Assembly: GCA_965637545.1 (NCBI GenBank)
Contig: OZ281500.1
Location: forward strand, 7,192,001 to 7,256,000
Source of the DNA: Phallusia mammillata
Taxonomy: Eukaryota
Direction of reading: 5' to 3'
DNA length: 64,000 nt
The stretch's first letter is position 1; the number at the start of each line of letters is the position of its first letter. A program made the position numbers and the translations under genes. Under the pieces are notes generated by a model that saw only the letters and a list, made by a program, of their open reading frames with translations, was not told the origin of the DNA and made no database searches. Of the stretch, positions 20,637 to 46,800 are shown piece by piece.

Positions 20637-20931
20637 TTTGTCATCTAATTTAGAGTTGGAACAATTAGCAGTCCGTTTCGGTTACTTTAACGTAAGTTAG
20701 ACAGATTTCATTACATCTTTTTCCACACGACGATGGTGAGTCCAGGTGGTATCTTTATTGTTGCTAACACCCGCTTTCCCGTCTTAAACCAGTTTAACTT
20801 GAGCCCGGCAAACTAGTTTTTAGTTCGAGGCCGAGACCAAACTGAACAAAGTTACTGGCCTCGTGGGAAAGTACCGACAGGGACCATTGATGTATTTTTG
20901 TATCTCTATTGCTCTATTGGCTGTGTTAATC

Positions 20932-21141
20932 GGTAGAACTACTAACACTGGAATTTGGCTGGCGCCTGGTTTAGTAGGTGGCGCAACGGAGCATAGGCGT
21001 TTATGGTGCTTACTCCGCAACCATTCTTACCATAAACCCAAATTGCCGAGTCAGCACCATAAACGCCTATGCTCCGTTGCTCCACCTATCGAACAATTTT
21101 CAACCAGGCGCCAGCCAAGTTCCTGTGTTAGTAGCTCTACC
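20932..21141. mobile_element. Mutator-like (MULE) hairpin MITE upstream of UBOX5
   Basis: Long imperfect TIRs covering almost the whole element (ggtagaactactaacactgg... / ...cctgtgttagtagctctacc); perfect 9-bp TSD gtgttaatc (20923-20931, 21142-21150). Confidence 0.8.
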
Positions 21142-21466
21142 GTGTTAATCAAAGCACGACAAACCGTGGTAAAAACTTTTCTATACTCTTTGAGCAGAGG
21201 TGTGCAACATACAATACTGATAAGCTAAATACAATTAACAAAATTGCACCTCGACCCGCAACTACATAACAAAAGTTTGCGATATAATTAGGTATGCCAA
21301 ATATGATTCTATTGTGAGCAGCTACCAGTAAAATGCACAAGTGATTCTTGTCGTATTGCTAGGTCGCAGAAATACAGCACCGGATGCATTTAACTGCTCA
21401 GAAACAAAGACTGAAATAGAGTTGCTTACTAGCATTGTATAGAAATAGTTTAGCGAGCCCCTTATC

Positions 21467-31800: not shown

Positions 31801-34800
31801 TCTAAGCTAAATTGGAAAGATCTTCTCAGATACTTTGCGGGTTTGACACTATTTCTCTAGCAAGTACGGTTTTGTGTAACACATGATTTGTTGTAGGTTG
31901 AATGCGATTTGTTTCCGGAGATGCGTGACACAACCCTCATCTTACGAACTGTGAACCCAGATGAATTATTAGTCAAAGAATTCGTCGACACAGCCATGAA
32001 TATATTCAAGTCAAACCTGATCGGCCCCCAAAAGTAAGATCACATCTGCTCTAGCACAGTATTGTGTCAAATCAATCGGCAGCTTAAAAAACCTACCCGC
32101 AGTCAATTGTCTTCCTTTGTTAAATACAGACAAATTCAGTTGATCAAATAACCACTTTGTCAAGCATTTTTATGCAAATTTCCGCAAAGCGATTTTTTGA
32201 ACCAATTGCCACTATTGGGATTTACAATATCTATACGATTAAACGGTTTATGCAGTTAACCGGATTCGCATTGATAAATACTATGCATTAAAAAAAGTTT
32301 ATCAATCAATCAAAGCCACTATTGTCTCAAACGAACGAGAAACGGGATGTAATGGTTGGCACTATGTTACATGTATTTAGATATCTGGATGTTTACAAGA
32401 AGTACGAGGACCTTCTGAACAACAAAGCCGATATGGATGTGATTCAGTTCCTCAAGGAGGAACACACGCTTGATGAACACGTGGTCATGATTAAAAAGTT
32501 TGATGTAAGCAAATACGGAAACAAGATCTCTAGATTTGTTTAGACAAATCCGGGTAATCGCAAAAACCGTGTAATTGCAATCAGATTTTTGAACCGTATC
32601 TGACTACTGCGTCCCTCAATCGCATGAAGAGATTGACAAATGTCAAGACAATTTTGCAAACAATTTTTCTATGATTGAATTTGCAGAAAACTCGTTCCGA
32701 AATCATGATTCTTCGCATCAACGTTCCCCTCAGCTTCTTCTGTCTTGATTGTTCGGAAGTAAATGAGGAACACGCCATGCGAGCTCAGAGGCTTAAGGAT
32801 CGAATTATTTTACACGAAATCGAACAAAATCGCGAGTCGAACAAGGGGTGAATAAATTAAGAAATTCAAAACGTGAAAACAGTATTGTTTGTAAAGTTGT
32901 AAACATTTGACCTGTTAACTCTAGTACTATAATTTGGTTTGTTGAAAACTTACGTAATATACGCAGTTGTTTCAAAAACGTCTTTCCAGTTACCTAAGTA
33001 CGGTAAAGACATTTTATTTAATAAAGCAAGTATATAGATTTATGACCGCAAAATACAATCTTGGGTTGTTTTTGAAGATATTGTTTTGGGGGCCCAACTT
33101 TTATTTTCTCTATTAACACTTTGTACATGCTTTGGATACGAATTTACTCCTAACCAAGTTTTTTAAAAAGAGATGTCCCACGCACGCCTGACTGAATCAC
33201 AAGCCGATATAATAAAAATCTCTATGCATAAAAAATCTATGCATTTTTCTGTTTGATAGCATTTGCCATGAGTATGATGTGATTGCTGACCGTGTATCGG
33301 AGATGCCGGAGACCACAGTGGAACTTGTGGCGCTCGTTGATTTCCTTAAGACTTCGAACGAGGTTACAATCCATGAGCTGAAGGAAAAGATCGGATGGGC
33401 CGCAGAAAGACTTGGATTTCTTCTCGACTACGCCACATTGCCTTGTAAGTTTGCAAAAATATCTTTACGTTTTGTTGTCGCATTTTTCCTCAATTCAATC
33501 TTTTTTGGTTTTGATTTTTTTAAAGTTGTATATTTTATGACCCAAATACAAAACTTTGAATACAAGGAACTTTTGAAAGAGTTATTGTTTGTTTTACAAT
33601 TTGTTGATTAGTATTACAGCGTTTGTTGGCCAATGCTTCAAGTATCAGTGGGAAACAGTTTAATGTACTGTGGTTTTTAATTTAATTTGTGCAAATTCTA
33701 CTGGATGAGATTATAGTTTACACTGTGATGACGATTTACGAACATTGCTTTAAATTGTTAGTTTTACTTTAGACGAGGACATCAAGCTGAACAGTAACGT
33801 GTTCCACTGGCCTGACCAAATCCACAGTGTGTTTGAGATCAACCGAAACCGACTGATGAACAGACGGGAAACAGCTGAAGACAAACTCAAAAAGAGGTAA
33901 GGCATTTACCATCTAAATCAAACAGGTGTAATTCATAAGAAGACAAAATATAATTTGGTTCAGTCAAATATCATTACTTCGCTTCTTTTCCTGGTAACAC
34001 CTAAAAGTATTTCCTGTTAACTATTGTTTATGTAACGTTTGTATTGTAGTTTGTTCGCATGAAGATGTTACTTAAAAAAATACTATTGCAAAATACAATT
34101 GAAGTTACATAAACTTTCAGAGTAAAGGAGTTCGAGGAGACTTTGAACGGCTACAACAAAGAAGTTGAGAGTTTTAAAAAGAAAGAAGTTGCGAGTCCCG
34201 ATGAAATGCAAAGGAACGTTGACAAACTAAACGATCTTACGAAATCACTCGAAGCGGCAACAGAAGAACTTGAGGTTTGTACCAAGTTATTATCAAATGT
34301 TTGTAATTGATGACCAGTTAAAACAAAACGTTACAGATGCTTACGTTTAAGTCCTCGTTGCTGCTTGATGAAAACTTTTTACGTCTGGTTAGATAGTGTA
34401 AACTGTGTTGTGTAGTGTAAACTTATTTAATCACGAGTCACCAGAGACTCAGTATAAGGGCTTCTATTTAAATTGGATGCTAAAGATGCCATGTACTTAG
34501 CTGAAATATATGTATCTTATAACAACAGTTGATGACTTCAGACGTATCAAAGTTTCCAATCTAATTAGATTGTGTTGGAAATGTTTTTCTACCTTTTTAA
34601 AATTTTAGAGTTCTAATTTTTTCGCTTCGGCGATCTGCGTTAGGCGATATACTTTTTGGGATAAAATGCTCCTTTTGTTTGTTTGTTTGTGTTTGCTCTG
34701 GGCAACAAGCCTTTGCCAAACTTGTTCTGTGTATCTTATCTGTACTAGGCGGTTGCCGTTTGTTGTCGAACTTGGTAACAATTCTCGATTTTGCACAGGC

Positions 34801-37800
34801 AATAAATGAGGAAGAAAGACTTCTCGAGTTCGATGAAAGTTCATTCCCAATACTGCAAGCAATGTTCCAGTTCAAGCAACCATACGACAGTTTGTGGAAC
34901 ACAGCGTTGAATTGGAACACCAAGAACGAAATGTGGTTGAATGGTAAACGTTTAGCACATGACGTTTTAGCACATGACGTTTTTTATACATGTACATATA
35001 TAAGTTACAATACATGTATATATTTTTTCTGTTAAAATAGAAAGTCAAATTCATCAGTAAACATGGGGCCTATACTGAAACATGCTTGTTTCTTGGTGTT
35101 AATTTAGACACTTCAAGAATTTTTAGACAATTTGGGCAATAAATTTGGGGCTTAATAAAAGGTCAATTGCAATGGGTCAAATGGTGTCAAAGATTATTTT
35201 GTTTTCATAAATATATGGAAACACCCTTGAATTCACGTACGGGGCGTCCTACCACCGACCTCTTGATTACATTGAAATAAAATGCACATATTTTTAAGGT
35301 ATCTAAATCTCTGTGTGCAGGACCGTTTCAGAATCTTAACTCAGAAGATCTCGCTGAAGAGTTGGGTCAGATGTGGAGAACAGTTTACAAACTGACCAAG
35401 TCGTTTTCGGACGCGGCAGGTCCACGACGTATAGCTGAGTCAGTTCGCTCCAAAATCGACAAATTCAAACAGCATCTTCCCATCCTTACAACTATATGTA
35501 ATCCAGGCATCAAAGACCGACATTGGGAACAGGTTAGTTGAGTAGCACCTCGTCAAAAAGTCCGTTTCTGACGCTAAGTTTTACGATGCACCGGTTGTGT
35601 TGTGACGCGTATCTTAGGCTACATTAGGCGTTTCTGTCCGTTTGTGGCAACTTTTGTTATGCAGGTGACTTATATATGTCAAGTTATGGGTAATTGGAAT
35701 TCTCTTCTGTTTGCAGATAAGCGACATCGTTGGATTCGACATCAAACCAGAAGCCGACACGTCATTGCTGAATATGCTGGAGTTTGGTCTCAACAAATAC
35801 ATTGACGAGTAGGTTTGAATTTTGTATTCTGTGGTGCTGTGAATTTTGTGTTTTAAAAACATAAGCCTAACCTTACCCGAACACACTTACAAACGCTTTG
35901 TTTGGAAAAATAAATATTTTGTGTTTTAAAAACAAAAACTAACCCTTACCCGAACACACTTACAAACGCTTTGTTTGGAAAAATAAATAGTATCATTTTT
36001 AAAAGAAAATATATGTTGAATGAAATTTAATTTGAATTTAATTTAAAGAAGCTGTCTTTATGACCAAAAAACAAGCAAAGGCAACTTGTTGTGCGTTTGT
36101 ACGTTTTTTTGTATAATTTTTTTGTTGGTGTTTTGTTTGCTTTTGATAACGGTTTGTTGTTTATCTAATAACTAACACTAACAGCATGGAACGAATCGGT
36201 GTAAACGCTGGAAAGGAATTCGGCCTGGAGAAAAGCCTCGCCAAGATGAAAAACGAATGGGCAGAAGTCTCTTTCACCCTGCTTGAGTACAGGGACACGG
36301 TAACCCAAACATTTTGTGTGGCTAATGAAGTGTGACTAAATGTATTTTGTCGTATGCATGTTTGCTCTGAGTGGATTTGTGTGTTGTGAATATTGCGTCG
36401 TTTAGATTTCCTTTTGTTTAAAGCTTGTAGTAGGCTGCAACTAAATCGAAACGTTTGTTACCGCAATTATGGACCTAGGGTTGCATGTTGTTAAAGTATG
36501 AAAAGCAAACGCCTTATGACACTTTTGGTTAGCATGCCTGTCCATTCTAAAGCTAATTCGTCCCTCTTTGCGAGCTATTGAAGCAAAATCGTTTCAAAAC
36601 ATAAACATTCCACCAGCACAAAAATTATAAGCCACCTACTTGTTGCAGAGGTTAAATCGATAAATTTATGCCTCCTTTTATGATGAGCCACCGGTTTTTG
36701 CAGCATCGAGGCGATCGGCGCTCGGGCCAGCAAAGAATGGTCGCTTGAGAACGCTCTCCATAAAATGAAAACTGAATGGAGTGAGATGGACCTTATAATG
36801 GTTCCATACCGTGACACCGTAAGATATGTGTGGTGGAGTGTGCCACTAAGTTGTGTGGTGGAGTGTGCCACTAACCCCTAACACAAAGTTGACAAATATA
36901 ATTTCAATTGGTGATTTAATGGTGACTGGGTGGGAAAGGGTGTTAGGTGTAACTTGGAATGTTGCATGAGTGAAAGTTTATTTGGTATTAACTTGCGGTT
37001 TTGTAAAATTGTGGTGTTTTGAGTTGAGTGTTATTGGCAGAAAAAATTGTGGTGATGTTTTATTTTTTTTCCATTTTTATTTATTTTTTCACCATTTTCA
37101 AATCGTGCCAATTTATATGCTAACTATTGTATTTATTACTGTTTATGCAGAAATATGCTATTATTTATTGTACACAAAACATTTTAAATGGTTTTAATAA
37201 GACCAGAACGTTATTTTGTTTTAACACTTAACAAACTACAACTAGCTGATCAGAAAACCAAACATTCATGAGAAACAGAGAAAAAAACAGCATTAGGAAG
37301 TAAAGGTCCCAAACAAGAGTAAAGATGGCAGTAAAAACGTAGAGCAGAACAAAGACAAGCTAAAGATATAGTAGAACATAGTTTAACCAAAACAGCCGAA
37401 TATCAGTGTTCAATATGCAGGACATCTTTATCCTTGGTTCAGTGGATGAGCTGCAGATTTTGTTGGACGATCACATAGTAAAGTGTCAGACTATGAGAGG
37501 ATCTCCGTACATTGGACCTTTTCAGGAGGAGTTTTCGGTGAGGATAAACGCAGTTATACAGCAGTGATAGAAAATTAAGGAGGTTGCATTGAGTTGTGGT
37601 TGTCAAGTTTTGTGTCAGATTGGTCGGTTTTCGTCCACGAAGTTTTTGTTTTATTGGTGTTGAGGTAAATGCGTATTTTTTGGAGAATTAAGGTTTTCTT
37701 TGCAAAGTCGTGAGAGCAGATAAAACACTGTCGAGATTGTTTTGGTTTCAGGTTTTAGAAAGTAATGTCGTTTGTTTCAAGAAAAAGTTACACTTGATAA

Positions 37801-40800
37801 AGCTGTGTTCAGGTCTCATTGCTATTGTAGTTACTGGGCCAGTGTTGTCTTGAGTTGTATTGAGATTTAACTGTTTTGGTGTATTGTATTGGAAATTAAC
37901 TATAGGTTTTTACGAAAGTTTTACAGCTTTAATTGTTGTGGTTTACTTAGCTTTGTTTTCTTAAATATGTTTTGAAGTAGATTTTTTACATTTTGCTGGT
38001 AAACTCATGCCTTTGTCACTTTTGCTCTACTGATCGTCGTTGTTTTGTTGATGCGCCTTGTTTTAATTCTTCAAACTGGTGGCATTTAGGGTCTAAGTAT
38101 TCTTGCGTCGATTGATGACATTCAAGCATTGCTGGACGATCACATCGTTAAGGCGCAGACCATGAAAGGTTCGCCTTTTATTGGTCCCATCGAAACCGAG
38201 TCAAAGGTTTGTATTGTAGTGTTGCAGTGTGAAACATTTCTTCTCGTTGTAAGTCTTATACCAGTACACAAGCATCTAAACTTCGGGTTTATTGTTGGTA
38301 CATTGAAATAGCACACATGGTCATTGAATTGGCATTGGTTTGCCTCGTTTGGTACAGTATGTACGTTATCGCAAAAAAGTACGCTGACCTTTAAACTCTG
38401 CAATGTTTGTTAAAATTTGTGTTCAACACGAAGTAAAATATTTTCGAAAACTTTCTTATTGTTGTGAACATTGGACTTGAACAGGTAAGTGTTAAACGCG
38501 ATAACATATTAAAATTGTCTATCTTTTAACTTGCATTGAAAGATTTTTTCCTTGTCTTAGGAATGGGAAGAGAAGCTGATTCTGATGCAAGACATTCTTG
38601 ATGCCTGGTTAAAATGTCAAGCTACTTGGCTTTACCTTGAGCCGATCTTCAGCTCAGAGGACATCTTGGCTCAGATGCCTGCTGAGGGTCGCAAGTTCGG
38701 CATTGTGGATTCCACATGGAGAGATATCATGGTTGAAGCTGTAAGTTATTGTAAAAGTGTCAGAATTTTTATCCCGCATAAACAATTATACAACTAATGG
38801 AGCATTTAACAATATGCACAAATAAAACAACTTATGCATTTTACTTAAACAGTTGCACAAAACACTAGGTTTATTACGAACCAATTCTATTAAATTTGAA
38901 GATGGCTAAATTGTATACTAGCGTAATCGCATTTTGGGCATAATTGGCAAATCTAAATGAACCAATTTGCAAGTGTTTTTTTTTCCAATATGAAGATTCT
39001 TTTCACATTAGATCCTTGTACCGTACTTTTTTCCGACTAATTTGATGAAATGACTAATTTATTTGCAGGTCAAAGACCCTAAAGTGTTGGTGGCAACAGC
39101 TCAACACAACATGTTGGGAAGACTACAGGAGGCAAACGATCTTCTCGATCAGATTCAGAAGGGACTAAACGATTACCTAGAGAAGAAGCGACTTTTCTTT
39201 CCAAGGTAACAACATTTTTTGCATTTATCTCAAGCAGAATAGATCATTTTTGTACTCTAAAATATTTTCGGCAGTTTAGTGCATTGTGCCCGAGTTACCC
39301 AACACTTTGGGTATATATTTGGGTATCTTTGTATGTTAGGTGGTTTGAACAAATCTTTCAAATAAACCTTGTGATTACAAGAAGAACTACATTTTATATT
39401 TTACTAAGAAGCCTCGGCCAATTCGAAAAGGTGCTAATCTCGTTTTATCACAAACGTCTTTTTTAGATTTTTCTTTTTGTCCAACGATGAGTTGCTGGAG
39501 ATTCTGTCAGAAACCAAAGATCCACTGAGAGTTCAACCTCACCTAAAGAAATGCTTCGAAGGAATCAACAAACTCAAGTTCACTGAGCAAATGGAAATTG
39601 TCGGAATGATCAGCTCTGAAGGCGAAACCGTTCCATACGGCCACAAAATTTATCCCGCCAAAGCCAAGGTTTGCTGAATCAAAACTATCAAATTGCCAAC
39701 AAAGTGTTTGCTAATCAGGCCAAACATTTGTTCAACAATTTCGCAAGGCTTGATTTGGCCCAAATCGTATATTTCAGCTAATCGTTATGTTATAATTCAT
39801 GAATATAAATCGAATAGCTCTTGTCATGCAATTGTTGCCTTTGTTTGAGCCGTTGGACTTAATAATGCTAGAATTTAGTGGACCTAATCTGTTTGACTGC
39901 GGTACAAACACACTGTATCATAAATATATATATACATCAGTTTTATCTATTGAATCCTGTAATGCTTTCGAAAACCTGTTTGCTTGCCAGAATTTGTAAC
40001 TTTTTTCAGGTTTATGTATTTGCCATATATTTAGACTTGCACAAAATCCAGCATGCGACCATTTTTAATTTACTTACATAGACACACGAGTTTTAACAGG
40101 GTATGGTGGAGAAATGGCTACTGGAAGTGGAAGCGAGCATGATTACAAGCATAAAGCAAGTTATGTTCAAATCGTTCAAAGGTTATGCCGAGACCCACCG
40201 CAAAAAGTGGGTGTTGGACTGGCCCGGGCAAATTGTCTTGTGTGTATCGCAAACTTATTGGACTTCTGAAGTAACCGAAGCGATTGAGGAAGGGTCGCTA
40301 GCGGTAAGTTAACATGTTTTCAGTTTACTGCAAGCATTCTACTAAACCTGTACGGTAGTGAAATAAGGTAGACAGTACAATATTTCGTTTTTGGTTGTAT
40401 TAAATAGTGTAAAAACAGGCCTTGAAGGTAAAAAGTTGCGAAGTCCGGGTGAGTTATGTGTGCAATGTCTTGTAAATTAAAAAAAATAGTTCTTGTGATT
40501 AGTTGCAAATATTATTTACCCTTACTGAATATTATAGTGTCGTATATACAACACGCAACCTCGTTTACCTGCCTTTACAGGTTAATTAAAGTATAGACAA
40601 TACTAACTTGAACGTTTCTTTTCAGGACTACCTGAAGCAGCTGAACTCGCAAATTAACGACATCGTCGATTTAGTGCGAGGCAAACTTGACAAGGGAGCG
40701 CGAATCACTCTTGGCGCACTCACAGTACTCGATGTACACGGTAAGTTGATCTCCAAAAAAATCCTTATGGTCTCAATCTATATTGTGCGACTATTATGTG

Positions 40801-43800: not shown

Positions 43801-46800
43801 AGACCCCTGTCGTGGGTTCGAATTCCATCGCAGGCTAGATTATTCTTGGCTGTGCATTTCCTTATTAAAATGCTTGGGAGGCCAGCTTAATTCAGTAATA
43901 CGCCTTCAATAATATGCTTGTCGTATTATGATTTATAAATGAGTATGCCGTGATCGCTGGTCTGTATGAATACTTTAGGGTTGATCCCAGTACGTGTGTA
44001 TGTCCACCTTAGGTACATTCAATTTGAGTTTTGCTTATGGGACGCTTTTACGAAAAACTTGGGTAGTTTCGCTTGCATACAGAAAAGTCACTTAACGGTT
44101 CCCTTTATAGGTATTATCTCGGATTTGTTTCCGGGTGTTGTCCTTCCCGCTCCGGATTACGACGTGTTCCTACAAGCGCTGAGAGAAAATCAGAACAAGT
44201 TAAACCTCCAACCTGTGGAATGGTCAATCGAGAAGATTATACAGGTACAAAGATAATTGACCAACCAATATTTGGATTGTCCTGCAGTTTGAACCCAACT
44301 TTCAAACTTGTTTTTGTTTCAAAGGTTTATGAAATGATGTTGGTTCGGCATGGCTTCATGATAGTGGGAGAGCCTCTCGGAGGAAAGACAATGTCATACA
44401 AGGTAGATCGGGTGTTAAAAACACATTACCGCACCGTTAACATGCGCATCAGTTTATATTAACATGTCGCTTTTTGCTTTTGAGGCCCCTAAATTTATTT
44501 CAACTATAGGCTGTAACGTTATAAAGGTAACTCTGAAACGCATGTCAACCAATCAAGCCCGTCTGAGCCTTGTGTTTCTCTAAGCAAGAAACATGTTGAA
44601 CTACCCTGAAGTCACCAATTTCTCACACTGAAGTCACTAAAAAGCAAATTCCAAATATAAAATGATCCAGCGGGATTTTCATGAGACAACTCGTCCAAGG
44701 CGGGCTTGCTGTTAGCATCACGAACTTAGGGATTGTCCGTCCAAATATGGCGCAGCTCAGTAAACGCCTATTTGTCAATTTAGGTACTTGCTGGCGCTCT
44801 GTCCGACCTCAACCACGCTGGCCTTATGGAGGAATTCGCTGTTGACTACAAAGTCATCAACCCCAAGTCGATCACAATGAGTCAGTTGTACGGTTGTTTC
44901 GATCCAATATCCCATGAGTGGACGGACGGCGTGCTTCCCATATTGTACAGAGAACAGGCATCGTCCACCAGTGATAACCGGTACAGCATTTAGACCAGGG
45001 GTCACCAAACTACGGCCCGCGGGCCGGATCCGGCCCTCGAGGTCCTTTCATCCGGCCCGCGACCACATTTTTGGTTTGTCACATCGTATTGATAACTTTG
45101 TAGGATTCAAAAAATAATCTACTCCTTCAGAAAGTTTTCCTGTCGCGATGTGTAGAATTGATATTACCAATCGCATAGGATTATAACTCCCAGGATTGAT
45201 TCGAATGATTCAAAGCCAGTTTGTTACGTCACATACATGACTGCAAGTGTTAATTGTGCGCAAACAATTCCTTTCTTTAGTTACTTGTGACGTCACATAA
45301 TCATTGCTCTTAAAACGAGACTTACTATACAAGCTAACAGTCCCATCCCCAGATATTTAATTGGATTATAGAAAGACCATATCTCGGCGCCCACATAAAA
45401 ATCGCACCGTGGGCAAGGTTTGGAAAGACGGCGCTAGAGCATGTGAACCATGCGGCCCGCGCAAATCGTTATTAAAACTTATTCGGCCCGCAGTGAAAAA
45501 AGTTTGGTGACCCCTGATTTAGACGATTTAAAATTTTAATTTGAACTGTCCTGTTATAGACATTTTTAATACCTAGGCCTCTATAGTGGGTTCGAGTCCT
45601 ACAACAAAGCCAGGTTTTCTATCATATAGCTTGTCATATATGGTAATCAGGGGTGCACAACCACAAACTCGTTTCCGCGGCCGTGAACATGTGCATTAAA
45701 ATACATGTGCTGGCGGCCGTGACGTAACTAAAACTATTTTGCCAAATACTTTAATTTTCAAACTGCTCTAAACAGATTTCGTGAGACTGGAAAAAAGATT
45801 ACCAGCCTGTAGTGACCATATGCGCCAGGGTTTTATCCGATTATTGTGTGCAAACAATGCGAAAAAAATAGGCACCGCAATCGTCACAATATACATTATG
45901 ACGTCATAAACAGTTAGCTCCGTTCAGATAACCTATGCAGCAAATTAGAAATTATTAATCTGAGCATTTGAGGCGGCTTTAAATGGCATATACATGATAT
46001 AAACCTAATTTTGTAAACCAGTTATTTTTACACAAAAACACGCAAGCAATTGGCGGCCGTTGGTGAAATAAGGACCTGCGATGCGGCCGTCGTAGAAAAA
46101 AGGTTGTGCACCCCTGTGGTAATGGTAAGGCCGGCTTAAATCTGTATGACGTCTTTAACACTGTTACATACTATGATTTTACTAGGTGTGTAGTATCAGT
46201 GCAAATTTGACTAGATGCGTATAATATGCTTTTTCGCTGTGTAGGAAATGGCTTTTGTTTGACGGCCCGGTTGACGCTGTGTGGATTGAAAACATGAACA
46301 CTGTGCTAGATGACAACAAGAAACTTTGTCTGATGTCGGGAGAAATCATCCAAATGAGTGCAAAGGTGTGTCTGTTATTAAAAAACAACCCATAAGTTTC
46401 ATTATAAGCGCCATCTTCTGCCATGAGGGCCAATGCATATACTGCTCTGGCAAGGCCCACGTTTAAGCTGAACATTGCATTATACGCAGATGAACTTGAT
46501 ATTTGAACCGGCTGATTTGGAGCAAGCCTCTCCCGCTACAGTTTCAAGATGTGGTATGATCTATCTTGAACCACATCAGCTGGGGTGGAGGCCATTCAAG
46601 GTCAGTAAAAGTGTTTTTTTAAACTATTACAAGACTTAATGTTGTTCTGGCTCGTTTTGCAGACCTCATACATGAAAACGGTTCCGGCCACACTAGAGGA
46701 AGATCACAAGCAGATGATCGAGGACATGTTCGAGTGGCTGATCGACCCGTGCCTGGAATATATTCGCCACGAGTGCAAATATATTGTGAGTGCAATAACA

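What the first reader, a model, noticed from the sequence alone, without database searches (positions are those of the whole stretch)
36112..36629. About 45-bp intronic RNA duplex that loops out exon A1
Seen: 36112-36130 (TATAATTTTTTTGTTGGTG) pairs with 36611-36629 (CACCAGCACAAAAATTATA), 19 positions with one mismatch and one G-U. Pairing continues TGTTT/AAACA, TTTTGA/TCAAAA, AACG/CGTT to about 36158:36582. The stem encloses A1 with its unusual acceptor (actaacactaacag, stacked branch-like motifs and no pyrimidine tract next to the AG). The same downstream arm can weakly pair forward with 37049-37063 (TGGTG/CACCA plus ATGTTT/AAACAT), which would instead loop out A2. Known: competing docking/selector pairings control mutually exclusive splicing in arthropod Dscam, 14-3-3 and Mhc. 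Inference: a similar switch operates here on a dynein.
Basis: partly seen in the sequence, partly recalled or inferred. Interest (0 to 1): 0.75.

Follow-up and report, generated by a model that had tools for sequence, protein, structure and literature searches.

The report
Intron RNA stem around dynein exon
Two intron stretches flanking one of two alternative exons of a sea-squirt cilia-motor (dynein) gene really can pair into a ~50-base RNA stem, but four related species with the same exon pair lack it, so it is probably chance or at most a species-specific add-on.

Summary
36112-36162 pairs with 36581-36629 (about -35 kcal/mol). It is rarer than shuffles give (8/2000 by score, 1/1000 by energy) and closes the minimum-energy fold in 541- to 2490-nt contexts. 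It encloses exon A1 (36185-36299) of a DNAH3-like axonemal dynein gene.

- A1 and A2 (36704-36818) are 115-nt homologues. Including both or neither gives an early stop.
- Five species share the A1/A2 and B1/B2 exon pairs, so the cluster is old and under selection.
- None of the four relatives has a comparable pairing around A1 (z -0.9 to +1.6).
- Two constitutive exons of the same gene in this window are bracketed by equally improbable repeats.
A better competitor lies at 36819-36867, over the A2 donor (-37.6 kcal/mol, about 3/120 after scanning).
- Public RNA contigs show only A1, joined to B2.

What is conserved is a UGUGU + ACUAAC acceptor at A1 and GU-rich/ACUAA repeats after the A2 donor, which point to protein-based control.

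My odds are about 55% a neutral or fortuitous stem and 30-35% a lineage-specific RNA switch.

The parts
35717..35808 (+). Upstream constitutive exon (92 nt) of the dynein heavy chain gene
   Evidence: Spliced RNA contigs join 35808 to 36185. The exon is conserved in five species.
36112..36162 (+). Arm 1 of the long-range stem: a U/G-rich stretch 73 to 23 nt upstream of the A1 acceptor
   Evidence: Its 3' end overlaps the conserved GTTTG-TGTGTT block.
36166..36184 (+). A1 acceptor region: three stacked CTAAY branch-like motifs, no pyrimidine tract, then AG
   Evidence: Read directly. CTAAC lies 10-20 nt before the AG in 4 of 5 species, against 16 of 120 other exons (Fisher p 0.002).
36185..36299 (+). 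Exon A1 (115 nt), the variant seen in RNA
   Evidence: Joints 35808>36185 and 36299>38090 in RNA contigs. Amino-acid identity to the relatives' A1 is 55-66%.
36581..36629 (+). Arm 2 of the stem: an A/C-rich stretch 123 to 75 nt upstream of the A2 acceptor, with the core CCACCAGCACA
   Evidence: The next-best partner in the 64 kb scores 33 against 50 for the true partner.
36604..36647 (+). Segment of the middle intron, overlapping arm 2, that can pair instead with the start of the A2-B1 intron
   Evidence: RNAduplex -37.6 kcal/mol. With the arm fixed and the partner shuffled, z is -4.5. After scanning the whole intron, 3/120 shuffles are as good.
36704..36818 (+). Exon A2 (115 nt), homologue of A1; no RNA evidence in public runs
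   Evidence: 50% identical to A1 and 79-84% identical to the relatives' A2, with intact splice sites in five species. No RNA run holds it.
36819..36874 (+). A2 donor followed by two 23-nt tandem units (GU-rich part plus CCACTAA); the alternative partner of arm 2 and a partly conserved element
   Evidence: Tandem repeat family D3. A homologous array of about 9 units follows the A2 donor in L006. GTGnGG lies at +8..+15 in 4 of 5 species.
37421..37537 (+). Exon B1 (117 nt), first of the second alternative pair; skipped in the RNA contig seen
38090..38206 (+). Exon B2 (117 nt), the variant seen in RNA
   Evidence: Joints 36299>38090 and 38206>38561.
38561..38743 (+). Next constitutive exon (61 codons). 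It was used to fetch the relatives and to name the gene.
   Evidence: The best solved-structure match is human DNAH3, residues 1068-1128, E 5e-28. The word search that found the relatives is.

Best explanation
The complementarity is real, and the stem would probably form on naked pre-mRNA. It is most likely a lineage-specific, fortuitous or neutral feature, not the device that runs this exon choice. One A/C-rich tract in the A1-A2 intron happens to complement the U/G-rich tracts that crowd the neighbouring introns.

The choice between A1 and A2 is made mutually exclusive at the mRNA level by the frame. Each exon is 115 nt, so using both or neither gives an early stop, and nonsense-mediated decay of such transcripts is inferred.

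Regulation more likely runs through the elements that are conserved in all or most of the five species. The first is a branch-site-proximal UGUGU + ACUAAC acceptor without a pyrimidine tract at A1. The second is a set of GU-rich/ACUAA repeats just after the A2 donor. These look like sites for STAR-family (QKI/ASD-2-like) and GUGUG-binding (SUP-12/RBM24-like) proteins. Binding at the A1 branch site would shut A1, and binding after A2 would help A2. The protein part is inferred from motifs only.
For: Non-conservation:
- Four other species share UP-A1-A2-B1-B2-NX with identical exon lengths and phases.
- Their A1-flanking introns score z -0.9 to +0.7 in whole-intron tests.
- Splice-site-proximal energy scans give z -1.5 to +1.6 in all four relatives.
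- In L004 the A1-A2 intron is only 157 nt long.

Not specific to alternative exons:
- In this window the constitutive exons near 32373-32507 and 39061-39220 are bracketed at z 6.7 and 4.7.
- Over five species, 2/19 alternative against 2/103 constitutive exons reach z 4 (Fisher p 0.11).
- The window holds several stronger, MITE-like inverted repeats.

Other points:
- RNA contigs show A1 used although the A1-enclosing stem is the predicted dominant fold.
- Frame enforcement.
- Conserved elements. CTAAY occurs at the A1 acceptor in 4/5 species against 16/120 other exons (p 0.002), and ACTAA after the A2 donor in 4/5 against 19/120 (p 0.004).
- Precedent for CUAAC repeats plus a UGUGUG stretch at a branch site repressing an acceptor: C. 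elegans unc-60, PMC3875643.
Against: - The stem beats composition-matched shuffles (8/2000, 1/1000), and each arm's best partner in 64 kb is the other arm.
- The arms sit suggestively. Arm 1 covers the stretch just upstream of the A1 branch motifs. The same middle arm has a second partner lying over the A2 donor, which gives a coherent two-state design.
- Synonymous sites between these species are near saturation: third-position identity is about 45-55%. RNA structures could therefore have turned over, and true covariation could not be tested.
- A second species (L004) has a near-perfect 32-bp repeat around B2.
- The RNA evidence is three short contigs from two runs of one study.
Confidence: 0.55

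Rival explanations
1. A lineage-specific two-state RNA switch. The middle-intron arm (36581-36647) pairs either upstream with 36112-36162 or downstream with 36819-36867. The upstream pairing loops out A1 and buries the stretch in front of its branch site, favouring A2. The downstream pairing loops out A2 and hides its donor, favouring A1. This switch would sit on top of the conserved protein and frame controls.
For: - The stem is significant against shuffles and is present in every minimum-energy fold.
- With arm 2 fixed, both partners stand out (z -4.8 and -4.5, 0/1000 each).
- After scanning the whole intron, z is -3.05 (0/120) and -2.16 (3/120).
- The two pairings use the same bases, so they exclude each other.
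- Ensemble probability is 0.5-0.9 for the upstream pairing and 0.13-0.20 for the downstream one.
- Introns of mutually exclusive exons are known to be enriched in competing structures (PMC6071210). A central element with two partners is proven in human ATE1 (PMC7797038).
Against: - There is no analogue in four species that share the exon cluster.
- Comparable brackets surround constitutive exons.
- The second partner was found after the fact and reaches only p of about 0.03 after correction.
- A1, not A2, is the form seen in RNA, and no run holds A2.
Confidence: 0.3
2. An srp-like activating bracket. The stem around A1 brings its flanks together and promotes A1 inclusion rather than skipping, as described for the paired elements around each srp exon 4 variant.
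For: A1 is the variant found in RNA while the A1-enclosing stem is the predicted dominant fold. In srp, complementary elements flanking an exon activate that exon (as summarised in PMC6071210).
Against: - Arm 1 ends about 10 nt before the branch motifs, which would more likely hinder than help U2 binding (inference from general splicing knowledge).
- There is no conservation.
- The RNA sample is tiny.
Confidence: 0.08
3. The two arms are the terminal inverted repeats of a transposon (a MITE-like insertion) or the remains of a local inverted duplication.
For: The window contains several inverted-repeat elements with similar spacing.
Against: - The arms enclose a conserved coding exon, not transposon sequence.
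- Neither arm has other copies in the 64 kb beyond low-complexity T-rich matches.
- Identity between arm 1 and the reverse complement of arm 2 is only 78% over 45 nt.
Confidence: 0.03

Closest known systems
Human/vertebrate ATE1 exons 7a/7b: R1 and R4 compete for R3 (PMC7797038)
   Same: There are two homologous mutually exclusive exons. An element in the intron between them is complementary to a stretch just upstream of the first exon, so that pairing loops out the first exon. A second, competing partner exists for the same central element.
   Different: - In ATE1 the competitor R4 lies just upstream of the second exon and resembles R1. Here that position does not pair, and the competitor lies downstream of A2, over its donor.
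- The ATE1 elements are conserved across vertebrates and proven by compensatory mutants. Here there is no conservation in four relatives and no experiment.
Arthropod docking-site/selector systems (Dscam exon 4/6/9, 14-3-3 zeta, Mhc)
   Same: Intronic long-range pairing within a cluster of tandem homologous exons, with competing alternatives for one arm.
   Different: - Those systems have one docking site outside the cluster and one selector beside every variant, conserved across species.
- Here there is one central arm and two flanking partners, no selector per exon, only two variants, and no conservation.
Drosophila srp exon 4 bidirectional pairing (described in PMC6071210)
   Same: Each of the two variant exons can be bracketed by a pair of complementary intronic elements.
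   Different: In srp the two pairs are separate elements, are conserved, and activate the exon they enclose. Here both brackets share one arm, and the direction of any effect is unknown.
C. elegans unc-60 intron 1A: CUAAC repeats + UGUGUG stretch bound by ASD-2 (STAR/QKI) and SUP-12 (PMC3875643)
   Same: A composite of GU-rich stretch plus CUAAC motifs sits at the branch site of a regulated acceptor. It is the conserved feature of the A1 acceptor in 4-5 species.
   Different: Only the motif resemblance has been tested here. Protein binding, tissue specificity and effect are unknown, and the repeats after the A2 donor have no counterpart in unc-60.
Mutually exclusive exons in dynein heavy chains (Schistosoma mansoni DHC1; PMC3228551, PMC5100056)
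   Same: A tandem homologous exon pair of equal length with split codons in a dynein heavy chain gene.
   Different: That case is in a cytoplasmic dynein motor domain, and no RNA structure was proposed. Here two adjacent pairs lie at the start of the linker of an inner-arm (DNAH3-like) dynein.

Membership tests
Docking-site/selector competing RNA structures (Dscam, 14-3-3 zeta, Mhc type) | A cluster of tandem homologous exons spliced mutually exclusively | tested here: inconclusive
   Homology, equal length, conserved splice sites and frame incompatibility are shown. RNA shows A1 only, so use of A2 is not demonstrated.
Docking-site/selector competing RNA structures (Dscam, 14-3-3 zeta, Mhc type) | One docking site complementary to a selector placed beside each variant exon | tested here: not met
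   The arm has partners upstream of A1 and downstream of A2, but none at the position beside A2 that matches arm 1 (-13.6 kcal/mol, 230/500 shuffles as good).
Docking-site/selector competing RNA structures (Dscam, 14-3-3 zeta, Mhc type) | The complementary elements are conserved, with compensatory changes, in species that share the cluster | tested here: not met
   Four species with the same cluster have no comparable pairing, and the arms fall outside the conserved intron islands. True covariation is untestable because the introns do not align.
Docking-site/selector competing RNA structures (Dscam, 14-3-3 zeta, Mhc type) | Disrupting and restoring mutations change and rescue exon choice | not testable with these tools
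   This needs minigenes or antisense oligonucleotides.
ATE1-type central element with two competitors | A middle-intron element complementary to a stretch just upstream of the first exon | tested here: met
   36581-36629 pairs with 36112-36162 at -35.5 kcal/mol, 8/2000 and 1/1000 against shuffles.
ATE1-type central element with two competitors | A second competitor just upstream of the second exon, similar in sequence to the first | tested here: not met
   The competitor found instead lies after the A2 donor.
srp-type bidirectional pairing | Two pairs of complementary elements, each enclosing one variant | tested here: inconclusive
   The pair around A1 is significant. The pair around A2 (36604-36647 with 36819-36867) is marginal after correction (3/120), and it shares its arm with the first pair.
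STAR-protein (QKI/ASD-2) plus GUGUG-binder splicing switch | ACUAAY/CUAAC motifs with an adjacent GU-rich stretch at the regulated splice site, conserved among relatives | tested here: met
   A1 acceptor consensus is TTGTTTGnTGTGTT-ACTAAC. CTAAY is present in 4/5 species against 16/120 other exons, p 0.002. ACTAA/GU repeats follow the A2 donor.
STAR-protein (QKI/ASD-2) plus GUGUG-binder splicing switch | Binding of the proteins and dependence of exon choice on them | not testable with these tools
   This needs binding assays and knock-down in the animal.
Axonemal inner-arm dynein heavy chain, DNAH3-like | Best match to DNAH3 among solved dynein chains, with DHC_N2 linker and AAA modules in order | tested here: met
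   Human DNAH3 in 8j07 matches at E 5e-28, ahead of DNAH7 and DNAH12. The neighbouring ORFs in the relatives carry DHC_N2, AAA_6 and AAA_7.

The most novel reading that the evidence does not exclude
A chordate (tunicate) inner-arm dynein uses a recently evolved two-state RNA switch. One central intron arm pairs either in front of the A1 branch site or over the A2 donor, setting the ratio of two linker variants. If so, competing-structure control of mutually exclusive exons would arise de novo and turn over quickly on top of an old, protein-controlled exon pair.
Probability: 0.25. Interest if true: 0.6.

Novelty: new member of a known kind. Interest (0 to 1): 0.4.

Why it matters
If the stem does act, it would be one of few RNA-structure switches for mutually exclusive exons outside arthropods and vertebrates. 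It would also be an example of such a switch appearing in one lineage on an exon pair that is much older. That bears on how docking/selector systems originate.

The more solid result is the anatomy. Two adjacent alternative exon pairs sit at the start of the DNAH3 linker and are kept in five species. The first has an odd, conserved branch-site acceptor and the second has conserved repeats after its donor. This gives a testable case for how cilia or sperm dyneins are diversified by splicing.

As a claim about the stem alone, the finding is a moderate lead, not a discovery.

Tried and rejected
- Whole-intron RNAduplex runs the pairing across the entire sequences and is meaningless. I switched to a local complementarity score plus RNAduplex on the aligned arms.
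- An ATE1-like competitor just upstream of A2 is rejected.
- A transposon origin is rejected: there are no other copies of the arms, and they enclose a conserved exon.
- No known RNA family was found in 35500-38600.
- Fetching relatives:
  - An exact look-up of ten window ORFs found nothing.
  - A word search with the A1 ORF found nothing.
  - The representative search returned mostly exon-sized fragments.
  - P0008 and P0001 sit on contigs too short to use, P0032 has no DNA on file, and P0071 is an intron-poor metagenome contig.
  - The 70-aa ORF of the next exon finally gave long contigs.
- L010 has a single A exon and an odd tandem array, so I left it out of the tests.
- A2 expression: no contig in four laid runs and no RNA run holding A2 words.
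- Enrichment of brackets around alternative against constitutive exons is not significant (p 0.11).
- Excess of G-U over A-C mismatches in the stem (5 against 2) rests on too few positions to say anything.
Full report
WHAT IS THERE

The region lies in a + strand gene whose exons translate to the linker (DHC_N2) part of an axonemal dynein heavy chain. The exon at 38561-38743 matches human DNAH3 best among solved structures (8j07, residues 1068-1128, E 5e-28), ahead of DNAH7 and DNAH12.

Reading the sequence and translating it gives this layout:
- an upstream exon at 35717-35808
- exon A1 at 36185-36299
- exon A2 at 36704-36818
- exon B1 at 37421-37537
- exon B2 at 38090-38206
- the next exon at 38561-38743

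A1 and A2 are both 115 nt and 50% identical in protein. B1 and B2 are both 117 nt and 59% identical. Using both A exons or neither shifts the frame and gives a stop within a few codons. Exclusivity of the A pair is therefore enforced at the mRNA level whatever else happens; decay of such transcripts is inferred.

Earlier notes of this scan call the animal the sea squirt Phallusia mammillata. I did not check that.

THE OBSERVATION

The pairing is exactly as described. The first 19 positions (36112-36130 against 36611-36629) hold 17 Watson-Crick pairs, one G-U and one U-C. It continues with small bulges to 36162:36581. RNAduplex gives -35.5 kcal/mol, or -38.4 with short extensions. It is the longest inverted repeat in 35700-37500.

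Evidence that it is more than chance:
- Against dinucleotide shuffles of both introns, a local complementarity score of 50 compares with 31.8 +/- 4.2, and 8 of 2000 shuffles reach it.
- By energy, for the two 100-nt zones, -45.5 compares with -28.8 +/- 4.2, 1 of 1000.
- Each arm's best partner anywhere on the + strand of the 64 kb is the other arm: 50 against a next best of 42 for arm 1, and 50 against 33 for arm 2.
- The stem closes the minimum-energy fold of 541, 895, 1612 and 2490-nt contexts. Core pairing probability is 0.92, 0.68 and 0.50 for the last three.

The total folding energy of the 541-nt stretch does not stand out (z -1.28).

THE FORWARD PAIRING

It is chance.

A windowed scan turned up a better competitor. 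36604-36647, which overlaps arm 2, pairs with 36819-36867 at -37.6 kcal/mol. That partner is the A2 donor plus two 23-nt tandem units, each a GU-rich part followed by CCACTAA.
- With arm 2 held fixed and only the partner shuffled, both partners stand out (z -4.8 and -4.5, 0 of 1000 each). The stretch just upstream of A2 does not (-13.6 kcal/mol).
- After allowing for a scan over the whole middle intron, the figures are z -3.05 (0/120) for the upstream partner and z -2.16 (3/120) for the downstream one.

In this species, therefore, one central arm has two mutually exclusive partners. One lies in front of the A1 branch motifs and the other lies over the A2 donor.

RNA EVIDENCE

Only two small runs, guessed to be RNA and from one study, hold part of the gene.
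- Their contigs join 35808 to 36185 (upstream exon to A1).
- They join 36299 to 38090 (A1 to B2, skipping A2 and B1).
- They join 38206 to 38561 (B2 to the next exon).

No contig covers A2 or B1, and no RNA run holds A2 words. Two contigs end exactly at exon ends (35808 and 36299). That would fit a branch in the assembly graph, but it proves nothing.

A1+B2 is thus the only form seen. This sits awkwardly with a dominant stem that is supposed to loop A1 out, though the sample is tiny.

RELATIVES

No tool fetches eukaryote genomes by name. I used exon-sized ORFs as handles: a word search with the ORF of the next exon, followed by contig look-ups.

This gave four other species on long ENA contigs:
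- L004, with haplotig L005, from ERZ21736675
- L006 from ERZ25067576
- L007 from ERZ22157276
- L008 and L009 from ERZ27241789 and ERZ27241799

The tools give no organism names for these contigs. All carry the upstream exon, A1, A2, B1, B2 and the next exon in the same order, with the same lengths, phases and good splice sites.

Amino-acid identity to the window:

| Exon | Identity to the window |
|---|---|
| A1 | 55-66% |
| A2 | 79-84% |
| B1 | 67-69% |
| B2 | 87-92% |

Both duplications therefore predate these species, and all four variant exons are under purifying selection. That is the best argument that A2 and B1 are used somewhere.

Third codon positions in unchanged codons are only about 45-55% identical. 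Neutral sites are near saturation and the introns do not align. A true covariation test is therefore impossible with these relatives. What can be asked is whether an analogous structure exists.

IS THE STEM CONSERVED AS A FEATURE?

No.
- Whole-intron complementarity between the introns flanking A1 gives z -0.47, -0.24, 0.26 and 0.07 in the four relatives, against 4.2 in the window.
- Energy scans of the middle intron against the last 100 nt before A1 and the first 80 nt after A2 give z between -1.5 and +1.6 in all four.
- In L004 the A1-A2 intron is only 157 nt.
- The arms lie outside the two intron islands that are conserved.

IS SUCH A BRACKET SPECIAL TO ALTERNATIVE EXONS?

I marked exons as blocks conserved by tblastx in at least two other species. 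I then ran the same bracket test on every internal exon of the five loci.
- Among 103 constitutive exons, 5 reach z 3 and 2 reach z 4.
- Among 19 alternative exons, 2 reach z 4 (window A1 at 4.9 and L004 B2 at 7.1) and one more reaches 2.99 (L008 A2).
- Fisher's test gives p 0.11.
- In this window two constitutive exons are bracketed at z 6.7 (32236-32283 with 32531-32577, -34.6 kcal/mol) and z 4.7 (38867-38944 with 39283-39356, -46.6 kcal/mol).
- Sliding the A1 geometry along the window finds five distinct places scoring 50 or more, several of them MITE-like repeats with stronger energies.

The A1 bracket is therefore unusual but not unique, and a bracket by itself does not mark a regulated exon here.

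WHAT IS CONSERVED INSTEAD

There are two intron islands.

(1) The 35 nt or so before A1 read TTGTTTGnTGTGTT-ACTAAC, followed 5-12 nt later by AG, with no pyrimidine tract. The window and L008 have two or three stacked CTAAY motifs. CTAAY lies within 60 nt of the acceptor in 4 of 5 A1 exons against 16 of 120 other exons (p 0.002). A2 has an ordinary pyrimidine-rich acceptor in all species.

(2) After the A2 donor come GU-rich units ending in ACTAA: two units in the window, about nine in L006 (6755-6978), and degenerate versions in the other species.

[quoted passage not shown] QKI's consensus is ACUAAY with a UAAY half-site (same paper).

From this I infer, without any binding data, that a STAR-type protein with a GU-binding partner could repress A1 at its branch site and promote A2 from downstream. 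Note that arm 1's 3' end and the downstream partner of arm 2 both overlap these GU-rich elements. An A/C-rich tract placed between them will complement them whether or not that matters.

HOW IT MOST LIKELY WORKS

Shown:
- the stem is thermodynamically favoured
- it encloses A1
- the same arm has a competing partner on the A2 donor
- the frame forbids both or neither A exon
- the exon pairs and two protein-site-like islands are conserved
- the stem is not conserved

Inferred: if the stem forms in vivo it would cover the 50 nt just upstream of the A1 branch motifs. From general knowledge, U2 snRNP proteins contact about 25 nt upstream of the branch site. The stem would thus disfavour A1, while the alternative pairing would hide the A2 donor and disfavour A2.

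Weighing the modest statistics, the brackets around constitutive exons, the absence of the stem in four relatives and the A1-only RNA, my odds are:
- about 55% that the stem is fortuitous or neutral and the choice is run by the conserved elements and the frame
- about 30% that it is a lineage-specific two-state modulator
- about 8% that it activates A1 in the srp manner
- about 3% that it has a transposon origin

COMPARISON WITH KNOWN SYSTEMS

The design resembles ATE1 most closely: a central element with two competitors. It lacks the R4-like competitor beside the second exon and lacks conservation.

It fails two defining features of the arthropod docking/selector family: a selector per exon and conservation.

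It partly resembles srp bidirectional pairing.

Mutually exclusive exons in dynein heavy chains are known in principle (Schistosoma DHC1). A search of the held papers on ascidians and mutually exclusive splicing turned up nothing on this gene; I made no search specific to DNAH3.

Another note of this scan proposes a similar central-arm switch in a collagen IV gene of the same genome, also unproven.

VERDICT

- Observation: confirmed.
- Interpretation: partly supported.
- If real, it would be a new member of a known kind (competing RNA structures at mutually exclusive exons).
- Interest: 0.4.

Noticed in passing
L004:8649-8681 and L004:9447-9478 (also L005:226-276 and about 1042-1064): A near-perfect 32-bp inverted repeat brackets exon B2 in a related species (-45 kcal/mol, z 6.4-7.1). 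The first arm is identical in the 98%-identical haplotig, where the second arm matches as it does in L004. It would loop out B2, and no equivalent exists in the other species.
   Followed up: partly
window 36130-36184; L008:6109-6163; L007:6766-6820; L006:5705-5759; L004:6675-6729: The A1 acceptor has a conserved composite: a GU-rich stretch plus ACTAAC close to the AG, with no pyrimidine tract. It resembles the ASD-2/SUP-12 site of C. elegans unc-60. CTAAY is enriched against other exons of the gene (p 0.002).
   Followed up: partly
window 36827-36874; L006:6755-6978: Tandem GU-rich/ACTAA units start a few bases after the A2 donor: two units in the window and about nine in L006. This is a conserved intron element of unknown role.
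   Followed up: partly
window 37421-37537 and 38090-38206: There is a second alternative pair, B1/B2 (117 nt each), right after the A pair and conserved in five species. RNA shows A1 joined to B2. Because 117 is a multiple of three, the frame does not enforce exclusivity here.
   Followed up: partly
window 32236-32283 / 32531-32577 and 38867-38944 / 39283-39356: Constitutive dynein exons (about 32373-32507 and 39061-39220) are bracketed by intronic inverted repeats as improbable as the one around A1 (z 6.7 and 4.7).
   Followed up: partly
window 35843-35988: A 73-nt tandem duplication (93% identity) lies in the intron upstream of A1. It contains CCTAACC / ACTAACCC motifs.
   Followed up: no
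window 44989-45029 / 45481-45523 and 20920-20971 / 21102-21155: Strong GC-rich inverted repeats (-55 and -79 kcal/mol) that look like terminal repeats of small transposons or a long hairpin.
   Followed up: no
L010:8741-9447: A more distant dynein locus (a 4x-coverage assembly) has a single A exon and six tandem 118-nt copies of the B-exon start. This is either a real array or an assembly artefact.
   Followed up: no
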